64,000 nucleotides of DNA from IMGVR_UViG_3300018424_000006:1-64000; one strand, 5' to 3'. Positions 46,938 to 63,593 are shown, numbered from the stretch's first letter. Program-made: numbers and translations. The notes: generated from the letters alone by a model not told the origin.

Positions 46938-46954
46938 TTAACACATTTCATAGC

Positions 46955-46991: not shown

Positions 46992-47181
46992 TAACCGGTA
47001 ATAATAAAGTATTAGTTTTGTGTTTTTTACGCACTACAAAAATTCTGATCCTTTGTAGAAAATGGCCACAGAGTCATTTGAAGTACTACCCTTCTAAGCT
47101 GGATTTTTAAGTGTTACAATGGATGTAGTTTAGTTGGAACATTGTCCTTTTTTGCGACAAATAGTCATAGGAGACTAGGGT

Positions 47182-50100
47182 ATGCACCTCTCTAATCAAC
47201 TCGAAACCTTGTTAGCCAAAGCATCTCAGGCCTTACAGGAAACGAGCCAAAGTATAAACTCCGTAGATTCTCAGTCGGATAACAACGTTGTTCAGATTGC
47301 TACACTCACAAACCAAATTCAACAGGTTTTAGATCTTCTATCTGGTATTACCAATATTAATGAATTTCTTTCTGACCAAGATATTATCTCGGACTTGGAT
47401 ACTCCAGCACCTCCTGAGAATAATAAATTGGTTCAAGCCTCAACAGTTTGGCAAATCAATAAAGAGCTAGAATCCTTACTAGATACTCTAGCCGCTTTCG
47501 ATGGCGATGCTGATGGCGTCGATTATGTCGAGAATTTAAATTCAGTTATGACTTGGGCTCGGGCCAACAAAGACATACTGGATGCGATGGCACCCGCTAC
47601 GCCAACGCAAACTGGTTTCTTTTCAAAGGAAGACAAAGCCAAGTTAGATGCACTTGAGCAGGGCGCGACTGCGACCAATCTTTCTGACGATGAAACAACG
47701 AATGATTCAGCTACCGCAGCTAGTACTGCATTGACATTCAAATTAAAAACTGCCCTAGATGACCTTGCTCAAACTGTTAGTGACATTCAGGCTAATGGCG
47801 GAGGAGGCGGTGGCGGAGGTTCCATTACGGATGCTGATGGTGCCGCAATCGAATCTGCTCTAGATGCTCGTTATAACAGTACAGCATGGCGTGATGGATT
47901 GTCCGAATGGACAAATACATTACCTACTATAGTCGATATTAATCAGACTACTAAGGCAACTCAAGACCTAATTATTAACTTAGATAATTATGGTTCTGAT
48001 CCTGACGAAGGTCAGACCTTGACGTATACTTGTTCGCCAATGACTAATGTCACATTAGCGGGTTCCATACTGACTTTCAATAGCCCTAATGTAGGTACCG
48101 AAGTATTTACTATTACGACTGACGATGGAGCAGGCGGTGGCGCGAGCGCAACACTAACGATAACGGTTACTCGTTTCGGATATGTTGAAATAGTAGATAA
48201 GACTGAATATGCTGTTCAGGGAATCGCCAAAGTTATTACACTTGGCCCTACTCATGACGATGAGAATGATCAGGCGGTCTATACTGTTACCGGTAGTACA
48301 GATTTCGTAATGGGCCCAGGTACTAACGAAATAACATTCACGGGTACTACTGTTGCTTCCGTTCCTCTTTCTGTACAAGCAGACGATGGTAATGGGAATA
48401 TATCTAATGCTACTATTACCGTTGAAGTAGAAGCGCCAAGTACTAATCCTTGGCCTGTTGTACAGAACGTGTCACCGCAATATGTAGCTAAGGGAGCGAC
48501 CTTTAGTTTAACGCCAGTAATTACTAACCCAGCTACGGCTGGTGAAGTGAACTGGTTTAAAGAGTTTGGGCCAGATGACCTAGAAGTTAATCCTATTACT
48601 GGCGAGATTACGTGGAATACGCCTTCTGATTGGCAAGCAGAATCTTTTCACGTTATTATCAGGGCAGTTAACTTAGATGCAACAGATGGGATGCTTGAAT
48701 TCATACTACACTACGGAAAGACTGCCGGCGATGTAGTTATGGTTGGTCCTAGTCATTCCTATAAGACATGGCAAGAAGCGCATCCTAACCTTGTTTCAGG
48801 ACAATCTATCATTATTGAAGATGGTAGCTATTCTGATTTTGGTATGGGTATAGGCCGTTTTAATAACGGTAACTGGTATCCGCCTTCAGGTACAGCTACG
48901 GCCCTGACATGCGTTATGGCAGAAACAGTGGGCGGTGTTACGCTAACTGGTGATGCAGGCGTTTCATTTGTTCTCTGGAGTGCGGGAAAGAGTGAAGCTC
49001 AGGACATATCCTTTAGCGGGTTATTCGTTAAAGGCGGTCCGTCCATCAATTTCAATGGGGATAGTAACGATAAACTAAATACTCGTGTTAAGCGCATTAA
49101 AACTATTGCCTGTGGTTGTGATGGCGATGACGCCATTCCCATTTATAGTCGTATTGCCGACGACATACTCATTGAAAGCTGCTATGCTTTTGGTGGAGGT
49201 CGCTATAAGATATCGACTAACGAGTCAACTCGTGTAGTTCAGCGTCGTAATTTAGGACGTATGGATAGAACTGATATGGATGGCGTAGAGGACCCCAAAG
49301 GCACATTCATGGCGTACAATACGTGGGAATTCTACTGGTCTAACCTTATTGATCTTGATGCCCTAGATCGTTTCCGTTCCAACGGTGAGATAGTTGGGGC
49401 CTTCGGTACCCCTGTAACAGGTACCGGAACTACACCTGAAGGTTCGTTTGGTATCATTACTACCTGTATCCACCTTAACTCTGAAAATCGTCTTTGTAAC
49501 TTCGATTCCCAACTCTCGTCTGCAGGTGGCCATTCTGACGTCAAGATGGAACATGTTGCAAGTTTCAATATTAAACCGGACTGGGCCTATGGTTATTCAT
49601 GGGGCTCTGGTTGGTTTGACCGGATGAGTATTGTTAATATTCAACCATTGGCTCCTGTTGACAGTGCTATGATAAATACGGGCGGTCGTTACTATTGTCG
49701 AGGCATGACTAACTCGATTATAGATCAGGTTGATATAACTACTAATGGCGGCACTGGTGACTTTTTCCGAGAACTAAATACTGGTCCGGTAGACATACCG
49801 TATAATGGCGGCGTATCCCGTACAGTTGAAAAGTATGGCGTCTATGGTAACAACATAACCAATGTCGATACGGCAGGTATGATTGGTACAGGCGCACAAT
49901 ACGAAATAAATACTACGACGGTTGATGTTTCAGCAGCCTTTGACTACTTGACTCGCGTAAATGACGACCATGCGCTTGCAGGTCAAAAGGGAGCCGAGGT
50001 ACTTTATCTGAAAGGGAAGTCTGGGCGTTTCTTTGGAGACGCCGGATATGATGAAGATACGAAGATTCCTATGTGGCCGTTTCCACTTCAGCATAAGATG

Positions 50101-53100
50101 GCTGAGAAAATGCGTGAGTGGACTTACACTGGACCTACTTATAGTGGTTGGGATTACACTAACCGAACTGTTGGGGCTAGTGAAACGGCAGACGGTAATC
50201 GTGGCGCATCTGCAATTGGTGAGACCATTACCAATTACGTCTGGGGAGCCTTAGGAAAAACAGTACCTCCGTTTAATGTAAAGGCCGTTCCGGAAGACGG
50301 TGGCTGCACGATTGTTTGGGAGAAGCACGCCCCGATTTCTCGTGATACCATTACCGGCTATAGAATTTACGACTACAGTCAGGTAGACGGTTCCTTGAGT
50401 AATCCTCGCACTATTTCGCGAGATTCTCACAGACACCAGATAACCGGTTTATTGAATGGTTTTGATGCAACGTTTGTCGTGACAGCTATTGATTCTGTTA
50501 AAGGGGAGTCGGGATACGGATATCCGGTGACGGTTAGACCGAATGGTACGCCTACGGTCAAGCCTACTATAACTAATGTGACTGGCAACTTAAACCTAAT
50601 TGAAGGTACAAACTTTACGTTAGGGGCGGTAGTTCAGGGTTACGAAACGCTCTCATGGCTACGGAACGATGTTGTTATCAGTTCTGTAACTGAAGAATCG
50701 TATTCGTCCGTAGCCGCTTTGGTCGATGATGGTGCAGTTTATAAAATCCGTGCCGGTAACCCGGTAGGCATTACCGAGGTCGTCATTTCGACACTCTCCG
50801 TAATTGCCGTGGATTCTACTCCTCCGTCTGTCACTATTGCATTAAATGGTGATACGTTAAACATTGGCTTAGTTGATAACCTCTATCAGAAAGCTGATAT
50901 TAGCCTGCAGCTTTTTGCTGATGATACCCCTGTCGGAAACTCGTTTTCTGGCGCAGTAAGTTCCATAGATTTACTAAATGAAAATTTACCTTTGGGTAAC
51001 CTTTCTTTACGTGTGGAAGCCACTGACCCGCAAAACAACACAGGGACGTCTAGCACAGTACAGTATACAGTAGGTAGTCCGATCTTTACTGATGACTTTA
51101 CAGACGCAAGTCAATGGCTTGCTGGTATTTCTGCGGTAGGTAATATTGGTACTGTAACTGAAACTGCTAGAACCTCAAGTGACGTCTGGACGAATACGAC
51201 CGGCTTTACGTTAAAGTGGAAGCAGAAGATCTTGGATCAGATGGGCGATTACGTCCTTTTCAATATGGATATAGGTATCGCTGTAGACGGTAACCGTGCA
51301 GGTTCAGTCCGACTACGTTTTTATAAACGAAGCGGAAGTAACTCCCTTGCCAGCTATACTAGCCGAGCGGGCGTCGCTACAGGCTTTACTGATACGTTTA
51401 ATGCTGGTAACCCTACTTCGGATACTGGCGGTAACGAACCTTTAATTCAGTATGAGGCAACTGCAATAGGCACTACCTTCACGTTAAAGGCAGATGGTGT
51501 AGTTATTCTGACTGAAACCCTACCGGAAGACATCGGACCGTTCGATGGTAGAATTCAATTTGACCCGGATACTGCTGGAGATATTGAAATTTCGGATATA
51601 GTTGCATATGGAGAAGAAATTCCCGTTAATGCTGCGCCTACCGTAGATCCCCAAACAGTAAATGTAGGAGTTGGTCAAAGCCGAGTCATAACTCTCGGAG
51701 AGCTAACGGATTCTGATGGAGATACGTTGGTCTATAGCGTTACAGGTTCAAGCGACTTTGTTGCAGGACCGGGCGCAAACGAAATAACCTTTGAATCAGC
51801 TAGTGCCGGAGTCCATACGCTTACCGTGACTGCTGACGACCAGAAAGGCTTAAGTACTTCAAACACATTAACGGTTATTGTATCCATTCCACGTCCAGTA
51901 AGTCTAAAGTATGCTTTTAGCGGCTGGGCAAGTATGCAGAATAATCTAGGCGGCCAAAATGATGGACTAGATCCTTCCCTCTATAATCTTGTCGGTAAGA
52001 TGATGACTGATAATGGCATTCTTGGCTACGTCAGTGATTTTGAATACCTTCCAGAAGGGTCTCCTGACATTGACGGAACAGTCGCTACTGCACACGCAAA
52101 TTCCACCGATTCCGAAGTATTTATTATTTCGGCCTATCCGGGTTCTGACGGTATTTGTGCAGATCCTGCTACGTCATCTGGCGCTAAGGGCTCCGGTGCC
52201 GCCGGCTGGGTTCAGAGAGTAGTTGATATTGCTACGCTAGCTGAAAGTAACGGCATGCATCCCGTTCTGTTCCAAGCATGGGGTAATGAAAATGCAAAAG
52301 CGGACTGGGGCAATGCTAAACTTAACACCGATGCCATTCTAGGCATTAAACAGATTGGGGTTATTCGCACAGCAGAAATACTCAAAGCAGTGTACGACGA
52401 TACTGCTTCATATGCAACAAACGTTGCCAATGGCAGGACTAAGTACGAACCTCCTGTGGATACCATGTGGTCTGGCGATATCTCAGATACAATTAATGGT
52501 TCTTATGCAATGCTTTATGCAAATGCGCTAGCTACCATGAAATATATTTCGGGAATAAGTGCTGCTGACAACGCATATGTCGTACCAGCGTACTACCAAA
52601 TGCCTGCTGCATTAGTTAGTCTCATTAAGCAGAAGGTAGATGAGATTCAGGTAGAAACAATGAATGTCTACATACCGGTTGGCGTAGCGCCATCTGCAAA
52701 CGACATTAATGTAAACGCATATCAGGGTGATAGCTATGCCTATGATTTAGAGGCATTAACGCTTATTTCTGATGATGTTGCGATTATACCTGCAAACTTT
52801 ACGCTTTCTAGCGCCACTGCTGCTCACTATACCAGCGCTAATATAGCTAACGGTATTTTGACGATAGTGCCCGGGAGTTCTTATGAGGGCCTTTCCCCTA
52901 TTATAGTAACTTATACGGATGCTGATGGAAACATTACACCTTTTAATGTTAACGTCAATATAAGTGCTAAGCCATCTTCAGATGCAGTAAAGGTCTGGAT
53001 AGATTTTGGTAAAGGGTCGGGTAGTGCATTCGGAACCGACGGGAATCTTTATAACCACGCTACTGCACTCGATGGCGGCGGTGAAGTTATAAACCTTATT

Positions 53101-55038
53101 CGTAGAATGGACGCACTTACCACTCAAGGTAACCTACAGGACGTTAATGGTGTCGTAGTAGGGTCAGTTAGTGCATTGACAACGGATATGTACTCTCCGG
53201 GATATGCGTCTCAGACAGATCCGATTGTAGTTGACTATAACCCTGATAGTTACTTTGACGGCTCGTTGGCTACCATACCTAAAGGTACAACTGTATCTTT
53301 CTCTATCAACGGCTTAACGCCGGGAGATAAGTTCGTAGTTGGTATTGGCGGTATGTATCCATATGCAGATGCTACTAACGTAGTAGATGTAAACGTCAAT
53401 GGGGTAACTGGCAGCTATAACTCGTCTCGTCTATCTAACTTGTTCAGTACATGGCAAGATATAGTGACGGTAAATGCAGATGGTAAAATTATCTTTGCAC
53501 TTAGTCAAAATAGTACTGCCGATCGAGGAGGTTTGTCTTATGTTACCTTAGAGAAGCAGGCAGGTTTACCGCCAGCTACTTCTAACTATTCAGCTGGCGA
53601 TCAGGTAATCAATCCTAATATGCCAACGGCCATGCCAGATAAATGGGTTAATGTTGAAGATCCGACTACAGGAACGCGCCTAACGCGTGTAACTGACTCT
53701 AGTACAGACATGCAACTATCTACCCAGGCGTTAAATGGCAGCTCCAGATGGAGTCAAGAAAATGCTGACGGCTCACTTTATATTGCCTTTGGAAGTGACT
53801 TATCGTCGTCTACCGTACTTAGGAAGACTACTGGTGCGGTTGTAGCCTATCTGGCGTCTGATGACTCAGGAGCCGATGCTAGCACTTTAGGTCTAGAGCA
53901 TGAAGTGCGGTGGGATAAGACTGGTAATCACGCAAACAGGGTTTACTTCAGAAGCGGCATGAGTCTATATCAGATTGACGATGTAACTCAAAACGTTAAT
54001 GCAGATCGTTCTAATCCGACTCGCTCAGTAATTAAGGACTTTAGTTCGTTAATTGACTGGCCTGCTGGAACAGAAGCGTTTGATAAGAAAATCTTCAATG
54101 GTCAGAAAGGGGATAGCTCTTTAGATTCCGACCATTGGGCATTTATGGCTGCTTACAATGACGGCGGTACTTGGAGAATTCGTGCTATAGTGCATTATCA
54201 GATTTCTACTGATACTACGCATATTCTTTATCCGTCTGACTTGATAGGTAGTAGCCTAGATTCTACTCAAGCAACTTCCGACTACTTCACTAGACAACCT
54301 AGTGCAGTAGGTATTTCTCCTTTGGCGACTGGTATTGTAGTACACGTTGCTCGTTCAGATACTGGCGTTTTCGAAGACTTAGCCGATACATGGTTGGATG
54401 GTACACACTTGTGGCCATTAGACTTAGATTGGAGGGCATCAAACCCATTTAAGATTTCGATTAGTGATACCAACTCAGGTTGGTGTTGGTCAGCAGACGG
54501 TCGGGAAATGTTTACATACCTAGATGACCGACGGGATATGTTGTGTGCCACTTATATATCTGGTGCATACAAAGGCTATAGCTTACCTAATACTGCAGTA
54601 CCGGGTCAAGATCCGGGAGTAGGTACAATAGACTTTGCTAGACATATTGATCTTGCATATACAGAAATACATTTTAGTCAGATGCCTCAAAGTAAGCCGG
54701 GCTGGGTTTTATTATCCACCTACGATACTAGTGACGAATGGGCCGATGATCAACTAATGATGTTTGAAGTCGTTGACCATAACTCCTCTCCTAATTGGTG
54801 GAGGGTTAGTCCTATGTATAGTAAGTATAGCGGTCAGGCTTTTGATGAAGCTCCTGCGAGCATGTCTTTGGATGGTAATTCTATCTATGTGTCACAGAAC
54901 TGGGGAACTAGTGACGGCGCATCGAATGAAGTATTCCGATATGACTTACCTGAAGATTGGCAGACTACTGCACCTACCACTAACAGTGGTGTTGTATATG
55001 GTGAAGTAATTGAAATAACAGGCGTGGAGGTTTCCTAA
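47182..55038 (+). CDS. Giant multidomain appendage protein (2618 aa): anchor, Ig/cadherin-like repeats, beta-helix, FN3, lectin-like, SGNH-like, lyase-like beta-propeller
   Basis: Shared N-terminal anchor; Gly8 linker at 47797-47820; DxD(G/N)D Ig repeats; parallel beta-helix about 48730-50260; FN3 'PPFNVKAVPEDG'; propeller beginning 'DPTTGTRLTRVTD'. Confidence 0.8.
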   Translation: MHLSNQLETLLAKASQALQETSQSINSVDSQSDNNVVQIATLTNQIQQVLDLLSGITNINEFLSDQDIISDLDTPAPPENNKLVQASTVWQINKELESLLDTLAAFDGDADGVDYVENLNSVMTWARANKDILDAMAPATPTQTGFFSKEDKAKLDALEQGATATNLSDDETTNDSATAASTALTFKLKTALDDLAQTVSDIQANGGGGGGGGSITDADGAAIESALDARYNSTAWRDGLSEWTNTLPTIVDINQTTKATQDLIINLDNYGSDPDEGQTLTYTCSPMTNVTLAGSILTFNSPNVGTEVFTITTDDGAGGGASATLTITVTRFGYVEIVDKTEYAVQGIAKVITLGPTHDDENDQAVYTVTGSTDFVMGPGTNEITFTGTTVASVPLSVQADDGNGNISNATITVEVEAPSTNPWPVVQNVSPQYVAKGATFSLTPVITNPATAGEVNWFKEFGPDDLEVNPITGEITWNTPSDWQAESFHVIIRAVNLDATDGMLEFILHYGKTAGDVVMVGPSHSYKTWQEAHPNLVSGQSIIIEDGSYSDFGMGIGRFNNGNWYPPSGTATALTCVMAETVGGVTLTGDAGVSFVLWSAGKSEAQDISFSGLFVKGGPSINFNGDSNDKLNTRVKRIKTIACGCDGDDAIPIYSRIADDILIESCYAFGGGRYKISTNESTRVVQRRNLGRMDRTDMDGVEDPKGTFMAYNTWEFYWSNLIDLDALDRFRSNGEIVGAFGTPVTGTGTTPEGSFGIITTCIHLNSENRLCNFDSQLSSAGGHSDVKMEHVASFNIKPDWAYGYSWGSGWFDRMSIVNIQPLAPVDSAMINTGGRYYCRGMTNSIIDQVDITTNGGTGDFFRELNTGPVDIPYNGGVSRTVEKYGVYGNNITNVDTAGMIGTGAQYEINTTTVDVSAAFDYLTRVNDDHALAGQKGAEVLYLKGKSGRFFGDAGYDEDTKIPMWPFPLQHKMAEKMREWTYTGPTYSGWDYTNRTVGASETADGNRGASAIGETITNYVWGALGKTVPPFNVKAVPEDGGCTIVWEKHAPISRDTITGYRIYDYSQVDGSLSNPRTISRDSHRHQITGLLNGFDATFVVTAIDSVKGESGYGYPVTVRPNGTPTVKPTITNVTGNLNLIEGTNFTLGAVVQGYETLSWLRNDVVISSVTEESYSSVAALVDDGAVYKIRAGNPVGITEVVISTLSVIAVDSTPPSVTIALNGDTLNIGLVDNLYQKADISLQLFADDTPVGNSFSGAVSSIDLLNENLPLGNLSLRVEATDPQNNTGTSSTVQYTVGSPIFTDDFTDASQWLAGISAVGNIGTVTETARTSSDVWTNTTGFTLKWKQKILDQMGDYVLFNMDIGIAVDGNRAGSVRLRFYKRSGSNSLASYTSRAGVATGFTDTFNAGNPTSDTGGNEPLIQYEATAIGTTFTLKADGVVILTETLPEDIGPFDGRIQFDPDTAGDIEISDIVAYGEEIPVNAAPTVDPQTVNVGVGQSRVITLGELTDSDGDTLVYSVTGSSDFVAGPGANEITFESASAGVHTLTVTADDQKGLSTSNTLTVIVSIPRPVSLKYAFSGWASMQNNLGGQNDGLDPSLYNLVGKMMTDNGILGYVSDFEYLPEGSPDIDGTVATAHANSTDSEVFIISAYPGSDGICADPATSSGAKGSGAAGWVQRVVDIATLAESNGMHPVLFQAWGNENAKADWGNAKLNTDAILGIKQIGVIRTAEILKAVYDDTASYATNVANGRTKYEPPVDTMWSGDISDTINGSYAMLYANALATMKYISGISAADNAYVVPAYYQMPAALVSLIKQKVDEIQVETMNVYIPVGVAPSANDINVNAYQGDSYAYDLEALTLISDDVAIIPANFTLSSATAAHYTSANIANGILTIVPGSSYEGLSPIIVTYTDADGNITPFNVNVNISAKPSSDAVKVWIDFGKGSGSAFGTDGNLYNHATALDGGGEVINLIRRMDALTTQGNLQDVNGVVVGSVSALTTDMYSPGYASQTDPIVVDYNPDSYFDGSLATIPKGTTVSFSINGLTPGDKFVVGIGGMYPYADATNVVDVNVNGVTGSYNSSRLSNLFSTWQDIVTVNADGKIIFALSQNSTADRGGLSYVTLEKQAGLPPATSNYSAGDQVINPNMPTAMPDKWVNVEDPTTGTRLTRVTDSSTDMQLSTQALNGSSRWSQENADGSLYIAFGSDLSSSTVLRKTTGAVVAYLASDDSGADASTLGLEHEVRWDKTGNHANRVYFRSGMSLYQIDDVTQNVNADRSNPTRSVIKDFSSLIDWPAGTEAFDKKIFNGQKGDSSLDSDHWAFMAAYNDGGTWRIRAIVHYQISTDTTHILYPSDLIGSSLDSTQATSDYFTRQPSAVGISPLATGIVVHVARSDTGVFEDLADTWLDGTHLWPLDLDWRASNPFKISISDTNSGWCWSADGREMFTYLDDRRDMLCATYISGAYKGYSLPNTAVPGQDPGVGTIDFARHIDLAYTEIHFSQMPQSKPGWVLLSTYDTSDEWADDQLMMFEVVDHNSSPNWWRVSPMYSKYSGQAFDEAPASMSLDGNSIYVSQNWGTSDGASNEVFRYDLPEDWQTTAPTTNSGVVYGEVIEITGVEVS

Positions 55039-58000
55039 TGCCATTTACGTACATTGTCGATACGAATCCTGCGGTACAAGGTAATGCGGATACATTCGCT
55101 ACCTTTGATGCCTGCATGACTCATATCTATGATACACATGGCGTTTACCTCGATAGTGGTGGTGATGCCGGATTGGTTACGATTAATTTCCGTAACTCAT
55201 CTGGCGTCCCATTAAACGAGTTTGTAGACGTTAATAGGTTCTTCCCTAACGGTACAAACCGTATTGAGATCGTTGGCCAAATGGCCAACGGTTTTCCTGC
55301 GGTTGTAGAAGACTGGGTTGATAACACAGAAACTCTCGTATTCCGAGTCTACGATGACTACATAGATGTTTATGGAGAAACTGAAGACTCGTTTATAATT
55401 CGAGGTGATTTAGCGGTAACCACCGGCAAGGCGCTCTTTTCAGTATCGAAAGATATGTCGAAGTTTGAGCGCATTTCACTTGACGGTGTAGATAGTAGCT
55501 ATTACGCTGGTATAAGCGGAAGTAATACTGCCACCGGCTCTCATCTTAAAATTGTTCGTTGTAAACGTCAGTTTTATGGTGCCATTCGTGCAGGTAATGT
55601 TTCACTTGACCATTGTACCATAAATAACTGTCGTCTTATCCGTAGTTCAGGAATCATCACAAATAGTATTGTAGCAAACATCACTTCTCATTCTGAGAAT
55701 GACGGCTTTATTGATGGCTCGGATTACAATATCTACGATGTTGATAAAGCGACTATAAAATATAACTCAAGTGTAGCGGATACTAGTCTAGTTGATGTAA
55801 ACAGCCAGTTTAGTGTCGACATTGCGGCTAACTTCAACGAAGATACCTTTGGGGCTTATAACCTTAAAGCGGGCTCCGTTGCCGAGAATGCGGATTCTAC
55901 AGGTACCGGTAACCCGGGTGCTGATACGGATGCGTTAGTCGGCGAGCCGCCACAATTAAGTATCTACTTAAATGGCGATACTCTAACTGCGGTAGTTTCG
56001 GATGACGCCACCGCTAACCCTAGCCTACAGCTTTATATAGACGGGGTGGCTCAAGGGAGTGCTCAAACAGCAACCTCTTGGGATATGACTCAGTTTGCTT
56101 TAGCTACTGGTGTTTATAGGTTATCGGTAGAGGCTACGGACGACGACTCTAACTCTGCCGTGTCTAACGAGCGCTACTATTCAGTGGGAGGGATACTTAA
56201 GGTACTTTTCTTAGGTAACTCCTTGACTCAAACACCTGTAGAACCCGCTGGGGTTTCTGACGCACTTTACCATACCGTCCGAAAAATGTTTCAGTCTGTC
56301 GGCTCCGACATTTTTATAGACTGGAGTATGATTGGCGGCGCTACATTTGAAGAGCATTATGGCAGTACTGTTTCAAGATCCAAGATCAGTTCTGGTAACT
56401 ACGATGTTATCTTGATGCAAGGTGAAGGTAACGACTATGCCGATGATGCGTGGTATGATACCTGGTGTAAACCAATGGTTGACGATGCTAAGGCGGCAAA
56501 TACCGACTGGGTTTTCTGGGCACACTGGCATCGCGAGAATGAAACTGATCGATATGCCGATCGACTGGCAAATCAGGTAAATGGCGCGGCACGAATGGGT
56601 TGTGACTTAATTGACACAATCTCTGCATGGCACAACATTCAGGCTAATAACCCTACGTTTGACCTTTATGCAGATAACACCCACCAGAACTTGGCAGGTG
56701 AGTTCATAAACGCCATAGCCATTTACCGTTACCTTACAGGTAATCCATCTTCAACACCGTCTTATGTCCAACCCTTACTTACTACTGATGTAGGTAGTGG
56801 TGGTCTAGGTTATACTACAGCTGATCTTGATATTATCCGAACTCAAGTAGATACGGACATTACAAATCAGTTTGTTAGGACTGGGGTAAATAGCTGTAGC
56901 GTTATAATTACACAACCGTCGGGCGCGATTGACGTCACTGTAGGTACTGAAGTTACTTTCACGGCAACTGCTACAGATAGCTCTACTGGCGATCTGTCAG
57001 CAAATATAGTCTGGAAAGATAATGACGGTGTTACTCTACATACAGGCAATACGTTTTCTACTACAACCCTACCTACTGGTAATTTGCTTATTACTGCAAA
57101 CTGTGTAGGTAGTGATGGAAAGACAACTACTGCCGCACGGTCGGTGAAGGTTCGTACATTAGTCAATTCTGCTCCTGTTACTCAGAAGGGCTATAGGGAA
57201 GTTGATTACCAATCTCCGTTCACTCAGCTTAGTTTAGCAGCTTTGATGACGGATGATAACGATGAACTTGATCTTAATACACTGACGATTACTCAGCAGC
57301 CTCGTAACTGTACGGCTGTGCAGGACGGTCAAACGTTAACTACGTTAAATGTTGACTATTCTGGCACAGAGTTTTATGGTACGGATACCCTAAAGTATAC
57401 AATTGCTGATATGGATGGCGCTGTATCAAACGAGTCTGTCTATGAGATTTACGTTAAGCCGCCACCTGCTTCTACGGGTACCCTTCGGGGCGGCCTGAAT
57501 ATTACAAGAGGCTCTGCCTTTGTAATTGATCTGGAGCGGTACTGGCCTAATGGCGATGCGTCTATGGTGGAGGTCTATGTTGTCGATACTAGTGATGGGA
57601 CTGAATATAAGTGTACCGTTACAGCGAATGCTAAAAACGAGATTACTTGTACAGCACCAAACACAATCGATTTAACTACGACTTTGTCAAACGCAACAAT
57701 TCGAATAAAACCGATAGCCACTCTGGGAAAGGGTGATGGCAGTAGTACGGCTAATACGAATGAGCTGCAGGATCTCAGCTTTAGTATTGCTGCCGGTGCA
57801 GATGGAATTCTTCGTAGTACGCATGAAAATGGTAGCGTACCTTCATTAATAGCGGGGCCATTAAATGTTTATCATTTTGATGGTTCAGTAGCAGTAGGAG
57901 GTTTGTTTGATAGGCCGGGTGTAGTAGTAACGGCCAATGACGCTACATGGGAAGTGATTGAAGAAGACGCCTTAGGTGGTAGCTTTGAGTACTTTACTGG

Positions 58001-58112
58001 TGGCGGTTATTCCTATAGTGCTGGTAGCACTGCAGGTATCGCTTACTTTAAATACCTTGTTCGTGACGGTAATGAAATCGCTATTGCAGTGGAACGCATT
58101 ACAGTTACATAA
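55038..58112 (+). CDS. Beta-helix + Ig + SGNH/GDSL esterase + Ig/PKD multidomain protein
   Basis: Block I 'VLFLGNSLT', block V 'ADNTHQNLAG' (DxxH); TAATG overlap with the upstream gene. Confidence 0.75.
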   Translation: MPFTYIVDTNPAVQGNADTFATFDACMTHIYDTHGVYLDSGGDAGLVTINFRNSSGVPLNEFVDVNRFFPNGTNRIEIVGQMANGFPAVVEDWVDNTETLVFRVYDDYIDVYGETEDSFIIRGDLAVTTGKALFSVSKDMSKFERISLDGVDSSYYAGISGSNTATGSHLKIVRCKRQFYGAIRAGNVSLDHCTINNCRLIRSSGIITNSIVANITSHSENDGFIDGSDYNIYDVDKATIKYNSSVADTSLVDVNSQFSVDIAANFNEDTFGAYNLKAGSVAENADSTGTGNPGADTDALVGEPPQLSIYLNGDTLTAVVSDDATANPSLQLYIDGVAQGSAQTATSWDMTQFALATGVYRLSVEATDDDSNSAVSNERYYSVGGILKVLFLGNSLTQTPVEPAGVSDALYHTVRKMFQSVGSDIFIDWSMIGGATFEEHYGSTVSRSKISSGNYDVILMQGEGNDYADDAWYDTWCKPMVDDAKAANTDWVFWAHWHRENETDRYADRLANQVNGAARMGCDLIDTISAWHNIQANNPTFDLYADNTHQNLAGEFINAIAIYRYLTGNPSSTPSYVQPLLTTDVGSGGLGYTTADLDIIRTQVDTDITNQFVRTGVNSCSVIITQPSGAIDVTVGTEVTFTATATDSSTGDLSANIVWKDNDGVTLHTGNTFSTTTLPTGNLLITANCVGSDGKTTTAARSVKVRTLVNSAPVTQKGYREVDYQSPFTQLSLAALMTDDNDELDLNTLTITQQPRNCTAVQDGQTLTTLNVDYSGTEFYGTDTLKYTIADMDGAVSNESVYEIYVKPPPASTGTLRGGLNITRGSAFVIDLERYWPNGDASMVEVYVVDTSDGTEYKCTVTANAKNEITCTAPNTIDLTTTLSNATIRIKPIATLGKGDGSSTANTNELQDLSFSIAAGADGILRSTHENGSVPSLIAGPLNVYHFDGSVAVGGLFDRPGVVVTANDATWEVIEEDALGGSFEYFTGGGYSYSAGSTAGIAYFKYLVRDGNEIAIAVERITVT

Positions 58113-58126
58113 ATGGAGTTTGAAAA

Positions 58127-59878
58127 ATGAAACGTTTAATCCAGCTTTTGGTTTGGTCTATTTCTTTAACCATTATGTCAGAAGCAAGTGCGCTTAAACT
58201 AAACTCCGGTAACAGTACCACAGTGGCCCGTGGGGCCACTGTATCTGTATCGGCCGGGAAAGTTTATTATGTTAGGCCGGGTGGAGGGAATGACACTCAA
58301 TGTACTGGCCTTGCTGATGTTGACTATGACGGTAGTGGGACAGGAGAAGCTTGTGCTTTTTCTACTCCATTCTACGCCCTTGGGTCTGGCGACGTAGGCC
58401 TTAAAATGGTTGGGGGTGATACACTAATAATTGCTGACGGTAATTATGATATTGGGTACGGTGCAAAAGGTACTGAAGGCTTAAGTTGTAGTACGTCTTG
58501 GGCTTGGTCATGCCATTTAAGTGCTATTCCCTCAGGAACCCCCGGAAGGCCAACGCGAATACTTGGAGCTAACTATAAAACAGGTTGTGCAACCAGCCCT
58601 AAGTTTATAGGTATAGAACGGGCCGAAGCAATTCTTAACTTAGAGGATTCCAACTTTGTTGAAGTTCAATGCCTTGAGCTAACGGATGATGAAGAATGTG
58701 GACAAGGACATCTCTCTACTCCTTATGGAATTGGGGTCGCTGCGGCATGTGCAGGAGAGTATCCATTCGGCCGGTGGGCACGTAATGGAATCTATGCGGC
58801 GAGATCCGACAATGTTTATCTGAAAGATATCCATATCCACGGAACAGGCTCTAACGGACTCTATTCGCATACCCTATCAAACTGGCATCTAGATAATGTT
58901 GATATCATTGGTGTTGCTAGCGCAGGTTGGTCAGGTGATGCCGGCGGCAACCCTACCAACAATACGGGTTATTTTAGATGGTGGAATAGCGAAATTAGCT
59001 GGAGTGGCTGCATAGAGTCTAAAACACAAAATGGTTATATGCTAGATGCTAGCTGTACTGGTCAGAATGGTGGCAACTATTCAGACGGTATCGGTTTCAG
59101 TAAAACAGGCGGTAATTACCATTTTAAAAATATGCTAGTCCATCACAATGTTCAGGACGGCATAGACCTACTCTATCTTGACGGCGAAGTAGGGACTGAA
59201 CTGCTCGTTGAGGATTCTTTATTTTACGGGAACGGTGGTAACGGACTAAAGTCAGGACCTACATATAGCGGACAGCTCACTCGTGACAGTACGATAATCG
59301 CTAACTGTAGTGAGATGGGGGATAGTAAACGCTGGGTAGCTGCCGGTACAAACACAATGTGTCGGGCAGGCGGTGGTCCTATTAGTGGACGAGGAGTTTA
59401 TGAACGCGTCTCTATTTATACAAATGGCGATGGAATTTTCTCTACTCAATGCCGTTATGAAAAATGTGGCAATGTCCACTTTATAGACTCTATCTTATTT
59501 GCCGGTGATGAAGTAGACTGGACTGGTGGTGATGATACTAGGACAGTTGAGAAAGCGGCATTAGGCTGGAACGATGCAGCTGCCAACCCGGCCTCGGAAT
59601 GGAGGTTTACGAATACCATAGTTTGGGACCCAAAAGGCACCCTAGCTAACGGAGTGGTGTATTTCGTAAATGGGGTAGAAACGACAATAACCGATAACTG
59701 TCAGGTATCTAGTTTTAAGGATGATACGTTAGACCTTACTGGCTGTCAAGACCCCGGCTTCACCGCATTCCCCGGAGGAGCAGATGGACCACTATACTGG
59801 AATGACGTAGAGTCTTTAGAGATAGATCCTAGTAGTCAGTTCTTTGGAAAAGAAATAGGCGATTGGAGAAGACAGTAA
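58127..59878 (+). CDS. Secreted right-handed beta-helix protein, PL9-like polysaccharide lyase
   Basis: Sec signal MKRLIQLLVWSISLTIMSEASA|; 16 Cys; 'SDGI', 'HNVQDGIDL' and 'GNGGNGLKSG' resemble PL9 Ca-binding and catalytic-Lys motifs. Confidence 0.65.
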   Translation: MKRLIQLLVWSISLTIMSEASALKLNSGNSTTVARGATVSVSAGKVYYVRPGGGNDTQCTGLADVDYDGSGTGEACAFSTPFYALGSGDVGLKMVGGDTLIIADGNYDIGYGAKGTEGLSCSTSWAWSCHLSAIPSGTPGRPTRILGANYKTGCATSPKFIGIERAEAILNLEDSNFVEVQCLELTDDEECGQGHLSTPYGIGVAAACAGEYPFGRWARNGIYAARSDNVYLKDIHIHGTGSNGLYSHTLSNWHLDNVDIIGVASAGWSGDAGGNPTNNTGYFRWWNSEISWSGCIESKTQNGYMLDASCTGQNGGNYSDGIGFSKTGGNYHFKNMLVHHNVQDGIDLLYLDGEVGTELLVEDSLFYGNGGNGLKSGPTYSGQLTRDSTIIANCSEMGDSKRWVAAGTNTMCRAGGGPISGRGVYERVSIYTNGDGIFSTQCRYEKCGNVHFIDSILFAGDEVDWTGGDDTRTVEKAALGWNDAAANPASEWRFTNTIVWDPKGTLANGVVYFVNGVETTITDNCQVSSFKDDTLDLTGCQDPGFTAFPGGADGPLYWNDVESLEIDPSSQFFGKEIGDWRRQ

Positions 59879-61575
59879 TGGGACAAACACTTAGAGTCGG
59901 CTCGGCTCAAGCTCATACGAATATTATTTCAGCACTAACGGCTCTAGGTGATATTGCCGGTACTGGAGAAAACATCATCTTGGTGGATGCTGGGTATAGC
60001 ACAACTGAAGATTTGGTTTTAGGTAGCTATATATCGAACTCTGGATCTGGAGACTTCATCCGTATTTCTGGAGACAGTGGAAGGTTTACCCTTACACCCT
60101 CCGTTGATTCGATTGAACTAGATGCTACAGATTGTATCTTAGAGAATGTCGATATAGTTACAGGGATAGCTAACCAAACGGCAGTACGACTAACCGGGAC
60201 CAACGTTCTCCTTAGACATTATTCTATTACACGCAATGCAAATGGATATTGTATTAGTGGTACTGGGGGCTCCGGAACGATTGAAGACGGTATCCATTAC
60301 GGAGATATCTCTTATCAAGCAAGGACTCTCCCTACAGCCAGAAGAATAACATGCGGCCCTTCCGATTACGGGCTTCATGTAACGACAGCCGAAGACTGTT
60401 TGGTATTTGATACGTCATTTAGTGACGATATAAATGCCACTACAGTAACCAACTGTGCGACGTCAGATACATCTGGTACATCTCCGTATCAGAACATAGT
60501 TCCGGCAACAGAGTTGGTGGACCCGACAAATAACGACTATACCTTAAAGGCCGATTCTCAGCTCATTGGTAAGGGTGTTACTGGGTTCAGTATCGGCGGA
60601 GACCAAACGACAGGCTATACTGCCCCAGCCACGCTCTCCTCTCTAACTATTAATAGCATTACCCAAACCACCGCCACAGCGAACTTAGATACAGATTTTG
60701 GAGACGGAAGTCTTTACTGGGTTTTAGTTACTGATGGAAGCAGTCCTTCAGTAGACCAGATTAAAGCTGGTACTAATGAAGACGACACTGTAGCAGCGTT
60801 AAGTGGTAGTCAAGCTGTAGGCGGAGTGGGCGCGCAAATTGTCAGTCTGACAGGTTTGACGCTCTATACTGACTACGTTATCTTTATCGTACATGCAAGA
60901 ACGGCAGTCTCTAACTCTAATATCCTTACGGCGGCGTTTCAGAGCGCAGATACTCCAAGACCGGTAATATCTAGTCTGAGTGGCTCAGTTGTTGAAGGAG
61001 AATCTTTATTGATAACCTGTACCGCAGCCGGAACATCTAGCGGAAAGGTTACTATAGGGGGAGTACAACAACGCGTCACTAGTTGGAGTCCAACTTCTAT
61101 AACAATTAATATAGCGGCTGGCGATCAAGCGTTTGGAGTAAAAGATCTTTTAGTGGAAGACGCTGGAGGTATTATATCTCGTCCTTACTCCGTAGAGTTA
61201 AAGCCAGGAGCTACCTTTACTTATACCGACTTAACCAATCCCGGGTCAGGTCCGGAACACCTATTTCAAGGTGCTTTCCCTGCAGTTAAAACTGGTGATC
61301 AGGTTATCTTTGAAAAAGTAACAAATCTGTCCCATGGCGTATATGTCGGGGAAGATGGCATTTTCTATTTAATGGGAGCAGGCGGGGTAGGAACTACCCA
61401 AACCTTTAAGATAAAGGTTTTCTTCAACGACTTATCAAGATGGTCAAATGAAGCTACAGTGACAGTTAATGAAGTAGTGGCACAAGTGGTTTTTGATAAT
61501 AATCTTCAACACGAGCCAGTGGCGGTTGAAGGCTATGACTTCGAGTTAACACTGGATGGAGTTCAGGTATCATGA
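59878..61575 (+). CDS. Beta-helix + FN3 + IPT/TIG multidomain protein
   Basis: Start ATG 59878 (TAATG overlap); 'DPTNNDYTLKADSQLIGKG' helix cap; FN3 'LTGLTLYTDY'; IPT 'VTSWSPTSITI'. Confidence 0.7.
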   Translation: MGQTLRVGSAQAHTNIISALTALGDIAGTGENIILVDAGYSTTEDLVLGSYISNSGSGDFIRISGDSGRFTLTPSVDSIELDATDCILENVDIVTGIANQTAVRLTGTNVLLRHYSITRNANGYCISGTGGSGTIEDGIHYGDISYQARTLPTARRITCGPSDYGLHVTTAEDCLVFDTSFSDDINATTVTNCATSDTSGTSPYQNIVPATELVDPTNNDYTLKADSQLIGKGVTGFSIGGDQTTGYTAPATLSSLTINSITQTTATANLDTDFGDGSLYWVLVTDGSSPSVDQIKAGTNEDDTVAALSGSQAVGGVGAQIVSLTGLTLYTDYVIFIVHARTAVSNSNILTAAFQSADTPRPVISSLSGSVVEGESLLITCTAAGTSSGKVTIGGVQQRVTSWSPTSITINIAAGDQAFGVKDLLVEDAGGIISRPYSVELKPGATFTYTDLTNPGSGPEHLFQGAFPAVKTGDQVIFEKVTNLSHGVYVGEDGIFYLMGAGGVGTTQTFKIKVFFNDLSRWSNEATVTVNEVVAQVVFDNNLQHEPVAVEGYDFELTLDGVQVS

Positions 61576-63593
61576 AGCGAATAATGAACATCAATGCAAC
61601 TGATGTAGTCTCACCCGGCGAAGTTGTTGATATACAACTCGCTGAATGTAATCCGATAAAGCTTTACGGAGCTTTACGGAAAAATGCAACCGACTATCCG
61701 CTAGAAGAAATTAGCTGGGATAAAGCTAGTAATGTTTGGCGGGTACGTACGGCTGCAAATCTACCTATTGATACTGGTTATCAGCTACGAGTATGGTTTA
61801 ATGATGCTAACATTATACCTGTTCCCGATGGTGGTCAGTACAGCGGGTTTGTAGGCGTAGACCTACAGATCCGTTTAGGTGACGTAGTAGATGGCGATAA
61901 TGAAGCAGTTACTTATAGCGCTATAAGTAGCGGTGACGCATCACTATCTATTGTAAATAATATTTTAACAGTTAACGCTAATACGGAAGGTACTGAAACA
62001 ATTACAGTGACTGCTACAGACTCTGTAGGAGCTTCTGGACAGAATACCATTACTCTAGAAGTTGTAGGCGAGGCGGTAACGACATTTGCGTACTTAACAA
62101 ACGACGTAAGTGTTATTGCTCCGTATTATGACGCAGGGCAGCCTGCCAAATTAGGTACGGTAACCGACCCTGTTACTGGTGTAACTATTCGCCGTATGTC
62201 AGATTCATCTACTGACTTGCAGCAATCCGATCAAGGTCTAAATGGTTATTCAAGATGGACCCAGATTAATTCGGACGGGACTAAGTTGCTGATCTTCGGT
62301 TCGAACTCTACTTCGTGTACAGTCCTAGAAGTTTCTACTGGCGCTGTCGTAGCATATTTAGCTTATGACGACTCTGGCAATGGCGTGACTACATTAGGTA
62401 TGGCCCATGAAGTAAGATGGGACTTATCTGGTAATCACCCCAATCGAGTTTATTTTAGAAATGGCACCCAATTCTTTCAGATTGATGATGTTACTCAGAA
62501 CAACAATGCCGATCGATCTAACCCAACTAGATCCGTTATTAAAGACTTTGAATCATTAATAACGTGGCCATCGGGTAGTTCTGGCCATCAGATAGAAAAT
62601 GATCAAGAAGGCGACTCGTCTAATGACTCCGACCATTGGGCATTTATGGCGACGTATTATGAGGCTGCTGGAGATACGACTCGCTGTAGAGCATTTATCC
62701 ATTACCAGATCTCTACCGATACAATGCACATTATGTATCCTAGTGACTTAGCCGGTGCTCCTGTAGCGACCTTTAGGATAAACGATTCAAGTGATTTTGC
62801 CAGTCTTGATAGTATTAAGGATATGGATTATTTCCCTGCTCGTCCTAACATGGTAGAGATATCTCCACTAGGTACAGGGTTTGTAATCCATAACGGTCGG
62901 GCTTGGGACCCGGCTACAACCATCTCGGGTACTTGGTTCGATGGTCCTCATTTATGGCCTCTAGATTTAGATTGGCAGCGTGAAGCGCCTTTCAGAATCT
63001 CTATTGACCAATCTCACTCCGGCTGGGCGTTTGCTAAAGACGGAAGAGAGATGTTTGTTTATCAGGACAACAGACGTGACTTCCTAACTGCCACCTATAT
63101 CAGTGGTGCAGTTAAAGGTTATAACCTTAATTCTGATGCCGGTCCTAATGACGTTACTAATGAAGGTAGTATAGATTTCGCTTATCATAGCGATCTATCG
63201 TGGACTGGATTCCACTTTGGTAAGATGCCTCCTAATCGTCCAGGATTTGTTATGGTATCTACCTACTCAGGCGGTATCGACGAATGGGCCGATGAACAGC
63301 TTCTTATGATCGAAATTAAAGATAAAGATGCTCCCACACCCCCTAAGATTCTTAGGATTGCTCCTATGTACCATGAGTATGAAAGTGCTTACTGGGATGA
63401 AGCAACTGCTAGTATGGACGTAACTGGAAATATAATTTGTGTGGCTCAGAACTGGGGTCTTGCAAATGGTGCTTCAAATGAAGTATATTTCTATGAACTA
63501 CCTAACGACTGGCATGCGAAGTTATCTGCGCCGACGTGGTATCCTCCGGAATACTACCAAACCGTAATTGTAAATAGTGTAGAGGTGGTCTAG
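61572..63593 (+). CDS. Ig-like + oligogalacturonate-lyase-like (PL22-type) beta-propeller protein
   Basis: 'DPVTGVTIRRMSD...YSRW..INSDGTKLL'; clearly paralogous to the C-terminal domain of 47182-55038; ATGA overlap. Confidence 0.7.
   Translation: MKRIMNINATDVVSPGEVVDIQLAECNPIKLYGALRKNATDYPLEEISWDKASNVWRVRTAANLPIDTGYQLRVWFNDANIIPVPDGGQYSGFVGVDLQIRLGDVVDGDNEAVTYSAISSGDASLSIVNNILTVNANTEGTETITVTATDSVGASGQNTITLEVVGEAVTTFAYLTNDVSVIAPYYDAGQPAKLGTVTDPVTGVTIRRMSDSSTDLQQSDQGLNGYSRWTQINSDGTKLLIFGSNSTSCTVLEVSTGAVVAYLAYDDSGNGVTTLGMAHEVRWDLSGNHPNRVYFRNGTQFFQIDDVTQNNNADRSNPTRSVIKDFESLITWPSGSSGHQIENDQEGDSSNDSDHWAFMATYYEAAGDTTRCRAFIHYQISTDTMHIMYPSDLAGAPVATFRINDSSDFASLDSIKDMDYFPARPNMVEISPLGTGFVIHNGRAWDPATTISGTWFDGPHLWPLDLDWQREAPFRISIDQSHSGWAFAKDGREMFVYQDNRRDFLTATYISGAVKGYNLNSDAGPNDVTNEGSIDFAYHSDLSWTGFHFGKMPPNRPGFVMVSTYSGGIDEWADEQLLMIEIKDKDAPTPPKILRIAPMYHEYESAYWDEATASMDVTGNIICVAQNWGLANGASNEVYFYELPNDWHAKLSAPTWYPPEYYQTVIVNSVEVV

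What the first reader, a model, noticed from the sequence alone, without database searches (positions are those of the whole stretch)
51900..63520. Scaffold carries 'dead' copies of domains whose 'live' copies are on downstream genes
SGNH pair: the 55038 protein has GNS and DNTH (about 56196-56741), whereas the homologous scaffold region (about 51904-52660) reads FSGWAS and DISDTING, lacking the catalytic DxxH. Propeller pair: the 61572 protein has GYSRW, ENDQEGD, RPNMVE, QSHSGW, YWDE, where the scaffold copy (about 53650-54960) has GSSRW, FNGQKGD, QPSAVG, DTNSGW, AFDE. Polar/aromatic pocket-like residues are lost while the framework is strongly conserved. Inference: pseudo-enzyme domains serve as lectins or as docking sites that recruit the active paralog through pseudo-symmetric oligomerisation.
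Basis: partly seen in the sequence, partly recalled or inferred. Interest (0 to 1): 0.75.

Follow-up and report, generated by a model that had tools for sequence, protein, structure and literature searches.

The report
Phage tail fibre carrying two dead enzymes
A giant tail-fibre protein of a 220-kb salt-marsh phage ends in two sugar-processing enzyme domains that have lost their catalytic residues, while intact versions of both sit on smaller neighbouring fibre proteins; the dead domains probably bind the host's surface sugars and the live ones cut or de-acetylate them.

Summary
The window is the first 64 kb of a 219.8-kb phage genome with terminal repeats. ORF 47182-55038 (S, 2618 aa) is a long fibre protein. 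Residues 1573-1825 model as an SGNH-hydrolase fold. Residues 2130-2618 are 51% identical to the C-terminal domain of ORF 61572 (E), whose model is a 7-bladed propeller closest to PL22 oligogalacturonate lyase.

- **SGNH domain:** 16 columns are invariant in 16 homologous domains. S departs at three: the nucleophile Ser (Ala1583), a block III loop Gly (Pro1653) and the catalytic His (Asn1772).
- **Propeller:** 92 of 127 family members keep all nine core polar residues. E keeps nine and S keeps none. S loses 11 of 31 conserved polar positions but only 1 of 20 apolar ones.
- **Live copies:** ORF 55038 (B) keeps GNS and DNTH, but it is only a distant relative of S's domain (16% identity), not a paralog.
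- **Origin:** a related phage's fibre protein stops at the position of S residue 1476, so the dead domains are an added extension.

The lectin reading is plausible. Docking by pseudo-symmetric oligomerisation has no support. This is a new variant of a known kind.

The parts
47182..55038 (+). S: 2618-aa long tail-fibre ('scaffold') protein
   Evidence: Single open frame. The exact protein is seen on 6 contigs. The N-terminal ~195 aa is shared with ORFs 36508, 41814 and 64823.
47182..51609 (+). S residues 1-1476: anchor domain plus Ig-rich stem, which is a complete fibre protein in a related phage
   Evidence: The 1358-aa protein of locus L010 aligns with S 220-1476 at 44% identity and ends at '...VTAY*', opposite S 1476. 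Big_9 and fn3 matches.
51622..51897 (+). S residues 1481-1572: Ig-like domain of the type that directly precedes free-standing propellers
   Evidence: 38-45% identical to the Ig domain just upstream of the propeller in P0009, P0010, P0012, P0013 and P0014.
51898..52656 (+). S residues 1573-1825: pseudo-SGNH domain (SGNH fold, catalytic residues lost)
   Evidence: Model m9745a6473e5b residues 23-275 match 4i8i (DUF4886) at Z 19.1, TesA at Z 15.1 and phage G7C gp63.1 at Z 13.8. Ala1583, Pro1653 and Asn1772 stand where 16 of 16 homologs have Ser, Gly and His.
51928..51930 (+). Codon of Ala1583, at the position of the block I nucleophile Ser
   Evidence: Family consensus is G-W-S-T; S reads G-W-A-S.
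52138..52140 (+). Codon of Pro1653, at the position of an invariant Gly in the block III loop
   Evidence: 16 of 16 homologs have Gly. The column aligns with the Gly before Asn of B's G-N-D.
52495..52497 (+). Codon of Asn1772, at the position of the block V catalytic His (Asp1769 is kept)
   Evidence: Family consensus is S-D-x-F-H-G-S; S reads S-D-T-I-N-G-S. It aligns with the His of B's D-N-T-H.
52660..52974 (+). S residues 1827-1931: cadherin/Rib-like Ig domain
   Evidence: Model residues 277-381 match the GH107 Ig domain, Rib and cadherin domains at Z 9-10.5.
52975..53556 (+). S residues 1932-2125: malectin-like beta-sandwich, a probable carbohydrate-binding module
   Evidence: Model residues 382-587 match ANXUR ectodomains (Z up to 12.1), GH2 C-terminal modules and human malectin (Z 10.2). 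It travels with the SGNH domain as one unit in P0129-P0136.
53569..55035 (+). S residues 2130-2618: pseudo-propeller, keeping 0 of 9 core polar residues of the family
   Evidence: 51-53% identical to E. It alone among 121 sequences lacks Y226, D344, E346, Y363, N426, E429, H482, Q498 and N500, in E numbering.
55038..58112 (+). B: 1024-aa fibre protein with an intact SGNH esterase-type domain (residues ~385-590, window 56190-56807)
   Evidence: G-N-S (Ser395) and D-N-T-H (His549) are invariant in 5 homologs. Language-model features are nearest to DUF4886/SGNH clusters. The family profile is homologous to the S-type family.
58127..59878 (+). C: 583-aa right-handed beta-helix protein, a candidate depolymerase
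   Evidence: Weak PF13229 match. Many homologs carry PF13229.
59878..61575 (+). D: ~565-aa protein of unknown function, possibly beta-helix plus TIG
   Evidence: The Atlas record starts at residue 6 of the TTG-started ORF. Weak Pel9A-like beta-helix and TIG leads only.
61572..63593 (+). E: 673-aa fibre protein with an N-terminal module (1-95), Ig (98-164) and an intact 7-bladed propeller (170-655, window 62079-63536)
   Evidence: Model mf0252fd86c5b has pLDDT above 90 over most of residues 180-650. Best solved match is 3c5m oligogalacturonate lyase, Z 24.3. It keeps all 9 core residues. Its N-terminus is 47% identical to that of P0008.

Best explanation
S is a long tail fibre of a jumbo phage. 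Its distal 1,140 residues are an added module with the order Ig, SGNH-fold domain, Ig, malectin-like sandwich, 7-bladed propeller. Both enzyme-derived domains are catalytically disabled pseudo-enzymes. I propose that they, together with the malectin-like module, bind the host's surface polysaccharide without cutting it, giving reversible first adsorption. The intact enzymes on the shorter neighbouring fibre proteins then modify or degrade that polysaccharide: B (an SGNH esterase, probably a de-O-acetylase), E (a PL22-like propeller, probably a lyase or other depolymerase) and perhaps C and D (beta-helix proteins). Shown here: the folds, the loss of the conserved residues, the fusion architecture, and the co-occurrence of live propeller and SGNH genes. 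Inferred: loss of activity, retained glycan binding, and the division of labour.
For: - **Phage and fibre context:** a 219,819-bp virus record with terminal repeats; virion and pre-neck-appendage families nearby; an N-terminal anchor domain shared by several large ORFs.
- **SGNH fold of S 1573-1825:** Z 19.1 to DUF4886, and Z 10-15 to many SGNH esterases, including the O-antigen-deacetylating fibre gp63.1 of phage G7C.
- **Loss in the SGNH domain:** S departs at exactly three of the 16 columns invariant in 16 homologs, namely Ser, Gly and His.
- **Propeller fold:** best solved match is PL22 lyase 3c5m at Z 24.3, against 19.7 or less for generic WD40 proteins.
- **Loss in the propeller:** S keeps 0 of 9 core residues while 92 of 127 members keep all nine. 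The loss is biased to polar positions, 11/31 against 1/20.
- **Fold still under constraint:** the frame is open over 3.4 kb despite about 47% divergence from the nearest relative, and structural Gly, Pro and Trp columns are kept.
- **Binding module:** a malectin-like sandwich lies between the dead domains.
- **Fusion:** the related phage L010 has a stem protein that stops at S 1476, followed by a separate live propeller gene.
- **Functional coupling:** live propeller and SGNH genes are adjacent in two other phage backbones, L004 and L011.
Against: - No activity or binding was measured. Loss of catalysis is inferred from residue loss only.
- The catalytic residues of the propeller family are unknown. 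The family matches neither the PL22 Pfam model nor any solved structure by sequence.
- Three-dimensional clustering of the lost residues could not be computed.
- No close relative of S exists in the databases, so selection on the dead domains cannot be measured.
- S's terminal branch is longer than that of its weakly supported sister P0008 (0.54 against 0.30), which also fits relaxed constraint.
Confidence: 0.5

Rival explanations
1. Decaying relic. The extension is a fossil of receptor-binding genes that were fused to the stem. The enzyme domains lost activity by drift after new live enzymes (B to E) were acquired. They now serve at most as inert spacer mass at the fibre tip.
For: The fusion architecture. 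S is not sister to E and has a long terminal branch. S also departs at 21 of 67 moderately conserved SGNH columns. A jumbo genome is tolerant of extra DNA.
Against: There is no stop or frameshift in 3.4 kb at about 47% divergence. Losses are concentrated on polar invariant positions, while only 1 of 20 apolar invariant positions is lost. In the SGNH domain the only invariant columns lost are the three at catalytic or oxyanion-type positions. Both patterns argue that the fold is still under selection.
Confidence: 0.25
2. Docking platform. The dead domains recruit B and E to the fibre by forming mixed, pseudo-symmetric oligomers with their live relatives.
For: S and E propellers are 51-53% identical. 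B to E lack the N-terminal anchor domain that S and ORF 41814 share, so they must attach somewhere.
Against: B's SGNH domain is only 16% identical to S's, too distant for an interchangeable interface. E has its own N-terminal module, 47% identical to that of P0008 in a 35-kb podophage that has no S-like protein. B's N-terminal domain is shared with ORF 63593 and its L010 homolog, which points to N-terminal docking as in other branched fibres. Nothing shows that these domains oligomerise.
Confidence: 0.1
3. Re-tooled enzymes. The S domains are still catalytic but use migrated or different residues, or act on a different substrate.
For: S keeps Ser1584 next to the lost nucleophile, and Asp1769. 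The propeller keeps 20 of 31 conserved polar positions, including H440, D503, H548 and E610.
Against: The simultaneous loss of Ser, the loop Gly and His removes both the catalytic dyad and an oxyanion-hole element. The nine residues lost in the propeller are kept across phyla in 92 of 127 members, which is typical of shared catalytic machinery rather than substrate specificity.
Confidence: 0.1

Closest known systems
Phage G7C tail fibre gp63.1 (PDB 4qnl) and other SGNH de-O-acetylating fibres (e.g. Pectobacterium phage Possum, PMC9569702; Klebsiella prophage SGNH receptor-binding proteins, PMC13123978)
   Same: An SGNH-fold domain embedded in a phage fibre; structural match Z 13.8 to 4qnl. B has the intact Ser and Asp-x-x-His motifs expected of such esterases.
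   Different: S's copy lacks Ser, a loop Gly and His. It is followed by an Ig and a malectin-like module, and it belongs to a separate DUF4886-like subfamily that no Pfam model detects.
PL22 oligogalacturonate lyase (PDB 3c5m, Vibrio parahaemolyticus VPA0088)
   Same: A 7-bladed beta-propeller; best solved match for E at Z 24.3, with 339 of 376 residues aligned.
   Different: 12% identity. The PL22 Pfam model PF14583 finds nothing in the genome. PL22 enzymes are cytoplasmic oligosaccharide lyases (my own knowledge), whereas this family is appended to Ig domains in secreted and virion proteins. The chemistry is untested.
Beta-propeller class of phage depolymerases (DepoScope, PMC11326577; PMC12491483)
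   Same: A propeller-fold domain at the C-terminus of a receptor-binding protein.
   Different: Those surveys deal with active enzymes. Here one of the two copies in a single phage has lost every core residue.
Branched multi-spike adsorption apparatus (G7C, CBA120; DT57C LtfA/LtfB, PMC4728585)
   Same: Several different receptor-binding proteins are encoded in a row. Some share N-terminal modules, which suggests docking on one another.
   Different: Here a formerly separate receptor-binding unit appears covalently fused to the stem and then disabled. The docking topology was not determined.
Pseudo-enzymes used as binding proteins (general concept, PMC5106787 and PMC10211241; laboratory-inactivated glycan enzymes used as lectins, PMC7828330)
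   Same: An enzyme fold is kept, catalytic residues are replaced, and the likely retained function is ligand binding.
   Different: This is a natural case with two unrelated pseudo-enzymes in tandem on one virion protein, and live counterparts in the same gene cluster. My literature searches found no described phage example.

Membership tests
SGNH hydrolase superfamily (S residues 1573-1825) | Three-layer alpha/beta/alpha SGNH fold | tested here: met
   Model pLDDT is about 90 over the domain. Matches: Z 19.1 to 4i8i, 15.4 to 1yzf, 15.1 to TesA and 13.3 to rhamnogalacturonan acetylesterase.
SGNH hydrolase superfamily (S residues 1573-1825) | Block I nucleophile Ser | tested here: not met
   Ala1583 where 16 of 16 homologs have Ser.
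SGNH hydrolase superfamily (S residues 1573-1825) | Block V Asp-x-x-His | tested here: not met
   S reads Asp1769-Thr-Ile-Asn1772. 16 of 16 homologs have His, and the column aligns with B's His.
SGNH hydrolase superfamily (S residues 1573-1825) | Oxyanion-hole Gly/Asn (blocks II and III) | tested here: inconclusive
   The invariant block III loop Gly is Pro1653 in S. The whole S-type subfamily has no Asn at the block III position. The block II Gly region is kept.
SGNH hydrolase superfamily (B residues ~385-590) | Block I Ser and block V Asp-x-x-His conserved | tested here: met
   G-N-S and D-N-[TI]-H are invariant in B and 5 homologs, and present in the L011 homolog.
SGNH hydrolase superfamily (B residues ~385-590) | Fold, or a match to a curated family model | tested here: inconclusive
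   No Pfam match even at E of 10 or less. Indirect support comes from hhalign at 97.7% to the S-type family, whose fold was modelled, a profile hit to 4s1p at E=6e-4 and Atlas features at 0.91.
Polysaccharide lyase family 22 (E residues 170-655) | 7-bladed beta-propeller fold like 3c5m | tested here: met
   Foldseek E=1e-9. VIA Z 24.3, well above the next rows.
Polysaccharide lyase family 22 (E residues 170-655) | Sequence match to the family model PF14583 | tested here: not met
   No match at E of 10 or less in the whole genome. The family profile finds no solved structure.
Polysaccharide lyase family 22 (E residues 170-655) | Metal-binding His/Gln set and catalytic base at equivalent positions; beta-elimination activity | not testable with these tools
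   No residue-level structural alignment or model coordinates are available, and no assay was possible.
Pseudo-enzyme (both S domains) | Homolog of an enzyme family that lacks residues conserved in the active members, in an intact gene | tested here: met
   for the residue loss. for the open frame, reproduced in independent assemblies. For the propeller, the family's own enzymatic activity is inferred, not shown.

The most novel reading that the evidence does not exclude
A phage has turned two unrelated carbohydrate-active enzymes into lectins by knocking out their catalytic residues. It mounts them in tandem, with a malectin-like module, on the tip of a long fibre, while keeping live versions on short fibres. 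This would be a built-in 'hold with the dead copy, cut with the live copy' division of labour, arrived at naturally and resembling what glycobiologists do when they inactivate an enzyme to make a glycan probe. A second near-null propeller (P0187) hints that this may recur.
Probability: 0.35. Interest if true: 0.65.

Novelty: new variant of a known kind. Interest (0 to 1): 0.5.

Why it matters
Receptor-binding proteins of phages are usually annotated as 'depolymerase' or 'esterase' from fold alone. This case shows that one virion can carry both live and dead copies of the same folds. Fold-based prediction of host range or enzyme activity would therefore be wrong for the largest fibre protein.

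If the dead domains are lectins, they are ready-made non-cleaving probes for an unknown marine or salt-marsh polysaccharide. They would also be a natural example of pseudo-enzyme evolution in a virus structural protein.

The work also defines a large uncharacterised propeller family, with at least 149 homologs in the word-index search and 293 representative-library hits to the wider S query. It has a clear set of invariant polar residues and a PL22-like fold, which makes it a candidate new family of carbohydrate-active enzymes.

Tried and rejected
- **Pfam, PHROGs and PDB sequence searches:** searches with single sequences of the domains gave nothing useful.
- **Family models against the genome:** the DUF4886 and PL22 Pfam models found nothing.
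- **Near-identity DNA search:** no match in the phage collection.
- **One alignment for the whole S C-terminus (A3):** it misplaced the SGNH homologs (10-17% identity), so I dropped it and made two separate alignments.
- **E as a recent in-genome duplicate of S's propeller:** rejected. They share a 10-member clade but are not sisters.
- **An Ig domain directly before S's propeller:** rejected. BLAST extended the alignment that far, but that part is only about 20% identical and belongs to the malectin-like sandwich.
- **Block assignment of Gly1653Pro:** I first read it as block II. Column-by-column reading of the hhalign output places it in the block III loop.
- **Close variants of S for a dN/dS test:** none exist in the collections.
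- **Other sequences with many departures (P0113, P0116):** these are conservative, subfamily-level changes that keep the core set.
- **Literature:** no described natural pseudo-enzyme receptor-binding protein was found. The PL22 mechanism paper is not in the library.
Full report
**Context**

The window is the first 64 kb of a 219,819-bp virus record with direct terminal repeats, estimated complete. It comes from salt-marsh metagenomes. The region 27-64 kb encodes large virion proteins. Several carry an N-terminal domain of PHROG 2163 'virion structural protein', and ORF 41814 ends in a pre-neck-appendage-like domain.

The finding covers six co-directional ORFs:
- S, 47182-55038, 2618 aa
- B, 55038-58112, 1024 aa
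- C, 58127-59878, 583 aa
- D, 59863/59878-61575
- E, 61572-63593, 673 aa
- upstream, A, 41814-46937

S, A, ORF 36508 and ORF 64823 share a ~190-aa N-terminal domain (27-42% identity). This is the pattern expected of alternative fibres that plug into one virion socket.

**Checking the observation**

*Propeller pair.* The match is unambiguous: S 2066-2617 aligns with E 104-672 at 51% identity, E=1e-162. Real homology starts at about S 2130 / E 170.

*SGNH pair.* This is not detectable by BLASTP beyond a 35-residue match around block V (E=0.01). I therefore tested it with profiles and a model, described below.

**The propeller family**

E has at least 149 homologs by the word-index search. The exhaustive representative search with S 1481-2618, a query that also covers the Ig, SGNH and malectin-like modules, returned 293 hits.

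The shared unit is a ~470-aa domain with no Pfam model. It is found in marine Gammaproteobacteria (Thalassomonas, Oceanospirillaceae, Cellvibrionaceae), Aquimarina, Acidobacteriota and phages, usually behind Ig-like domains.

An AlphaFold2 model of E built on 127 sequences has pLDDT above 90 over most of residues 180-650. It is a 7-bladed beta-propeller. Its best solved match is oligogalacturonate lyase 3c5m of family PL22:
- Foldseek E=1e-9.
- VIA Z 24.3, with 339 of 376 residues aligned; the next, generic WD40 propellers score Z 19.7 or less.

Membership of PL22 itself is not supported. PF14583 finds nothing in the genome, and the family profile finds no solved structure. Phage depolymerases with propeller folds are a recognised class (PMC11326577).

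**Loss of conserved residues in S's propeller**

I aligned S and E with 119 homologs and looked at the 51 columns that are at least 95% conserved.
- E departs at 1 of them, and that position is apolar.
- S departs at 12: 11 of 31 polar positions but 1 of 20 apolar ones (Fisher p=0.017 for the bias; p=0.002 for S against E).

S alone, among 121 sequences, lacks Y226, D344, E346, Y363, N426, E429, H482, Q498 and N500 in E numbering. In S these read S, G, K, N, S, G, N, L and D.

In the wider 127-sequence alignment, 92 members keep all nine and 120 keep at least seven. S keeps none.

Two other sequences with many departures (P0113, P0116) show conservative subfamily changes and keep this core. 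Only P0187, a 1337-aa protein on a short contig, is similarly depleted (1 of 9).

In the E model, most lost residues lie just before or at the start of strands of successive blades: 226, 344/346, 424-429, 482 and 607. This fits one mouth of the central tunnel. It is inferred from secondary structure only, because coordinates are not exposed.

**The SGNH-like domain of S**

The representative search found 16 homologous segments, which always travel with a following ~300-aa region. Their consensus has Y-N-G-W-S-T-M at block I and S-D-x-F-H-G-S-Y-A at block V. S reads F-S-G-W-A-S-M and S-D-T-I-N-G-S-Y-A.

Of the 16 columns that are 100% conserved in those 16 segments, S departs at exactly three:
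- Ser to Ala1583.
- Gly to Pro1653. By the hhalign columns, this aligns with the Gly preceding the Asn of B's G-N-D, in the block III loop.
- His to Asn1772.

A model of S 1551-2140 (pLDDT 84) shows three domains:
- Residues 1573-1825 are an SGNH fold. Matches: Z 19.1 to DUF4886 protein 4i8i, Z 10-15 to TesA, rhamnogalacturonan acetylesterase, CE2 esterases and peptidoglycan O-acetylesterase Ape1, and Z 13.8 to the fibre gp63.1 of phage G7C.
- Residues 1827-1931 are a cadherin/Rib-like Ig domain.
- Residues 1932-2125 are a malectin-like sandwich.

**B and its relation to S**

B 385-590 keeps G-N-S and D-N-T-H, invariant in its five homologs and in a sixth from locus L011. Language-model features place it with DUF4886/SGNH clusters.

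The B-type and S-type families are homologous by profile-profile comparison: 97.7% probability, E=1.8e-12, 183 columns, with the DxxH motifs aligned. Identity is only 16%. B is thus a live member of the same superfamily, not the paralog of S's domain.

The live counterparts of S's own subfamily are in other virion proteins (P0130 and P0133, next to tail genes) and in a bacterial protein with two copies (P0129).

**Origin of the architecture**

In a related 138-kb phage (L010), a 1358-aa protein aligns with S 220-1476 at 44% identity and ends at '...VTAY*', opposite S 1476. S continues in frame. In L010 the next gene is a separate, live propeller protein (P0010), followed by a homolog of ORF 63593. 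That is the same order as E and ORF 63593 here.

Free-standing propeller proteins have an Ig domain immediately before the propeller. That Ig matches S 1481-1577 at 38-45% identity.

The unit S 1576-2124 (SGNH, Ig, malectin-like) matches, end to end, the unit found in P0132 and P0133.

The simplest reading is as follows. The body of a propeller receptor-binding protein was fused to the end of the stem, and an SGNH-Ig-malectin cassette sits exactly between its Ig and its propeller. The order of these events, and of the residue losses, is not known.

In the family tree, S and E fall in one 10-member phage clade (support 100/100) but are not sisters. S groups weakly with P0008.

P0008 comes from a 35-kb SU10-like podophage, where it is directly followed by the B homolog P0003. 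A third backbone (L011) also has a propeller gene followed by a B homolog. The live propeller and live SGNH proteins therefore travel together, as expected of two enzymes acting on one acetylated polysaccharide.

**Reliability of the sequence**

The exact S protein is on 6 contigs from JGI and ENA. Contigs from two metatranscriptome and two DNA libraries reproduce 51800-55040 with no differences. Presence in RNA libraries does not prove transcription.

**Interpretation**

That both S domains are catalytically dead is well supported for the SGNH domain: three hallmark positions are lost and nothing else among the invariant columns. It is strongly suggested for the propeller, where the whole conserved polar core is lost but the family's chemistry is unproven.

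Three points indicate that the folds are still under selection:
- the intact 3.4-kb frame at about 47% divergence
- the polar-specific pattern of loss
- the retained structural columns

A non-cleaving glycan-binding role best fits the malectin-like neighbour and the position at the fibre tip. It remains an inference.

Against it stand the distance between the SGNH domains and the N-terminal modules that B and E share with proteins of phages lacking any S-like scaffold.

**Novelty**

SGNH esterase fibres, propeller depolymerases, multi-fibre jumbo phages and pseudo-enzymes are each known. New here is a natural tandem of two unrelated pseudo-enzymes on one virion protein, with live counterparts in the same cluster, and a documented fusion origin. 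My searches found no described phage precedent. I rate it a new variant of a known kind, of moderate interest.

Noticed in passing
window 27202-28197, 35614-36429, 36508-37542, 41814-46937, 47182-55038; genome 64823-67498: At least four large ORFs (36508, 41814, 47182, 64823) share a ~190-aa N-terminal domain by BLASTP. Two more (27202, 35614) match the same PHROG 2163 'virion structural protein' N-terminus. The phage seems to carry a whole set of alternative fibres on one type of anchor.
   Followed up: partly
loci L004 10001-14726, L011 10001-15210; window 55038-58112 and 61572-63593: A live propeller gene and a live SGNH (B-type) gene are directly adjacent in a 35-kb SU10-like podophage and in a 122-kb phage. 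They look like a two-enzyme cassette that moves between unrelated phage backbones.
   Followed up: partly
P0187 residues 897-1336 (locus L015 295-4308): A second, distant member of the propeller family, at the C-terminus of a 1337-aa Ig-rich protein, keeps only 1 of the 9 core residues. It is possibly an independent pseudo-propeller. The contig is too short for context.
   Followed up: partly
locus L007 10001-16240 (P0129): A 2079-aa protein in a bacterial chromosomal context carries two complete, apparently live copies of the SGNH-Ig-malectin unit. The S-type SGNH subfamily is therefore also cellular.
   Followed up: no
locus L009 5900-10015 (P0128): A phage protein next to a PB4-type spike gene has the same two domain families in the opposite order (propeller 152-652, then SGNH-like 836-1087), with Ser and His present. 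The domain order is shuffled between phages.
   Followed up: no
window 58127-59878 and 59863-61575: C belongs to a right-handed beta-helix family (homologs carry PF13229). D has weak Pel9A-like beta-helix and TIG leads. D's real start is probably the ATG at 59878 (residue 6 of the TTG-started ORF), overlapping C's stop by one base.
   Followed up: partly
window 55038-56000 and 63593-64000 (ORF 63593-64726 in the genome): B's N-terminal ~350 aa are 26% identical to the whole of the 377-aa ORF 63593, whose homolog also follows the propeller gene in phage L010. This may be a shared docking or assembly module.
   Followed up: no
window 28795-34959: Three consecutive ORFs of 661, 728 and 663 aa in the structural region have no PHROG match at all.
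   Followed up: no
window 46000-64000: G+C is 43-46% across the fibre genes, against 38-41% in most of the rest of the window. This fits horizontally acquired receptor-binding modules.
   Followed up: no
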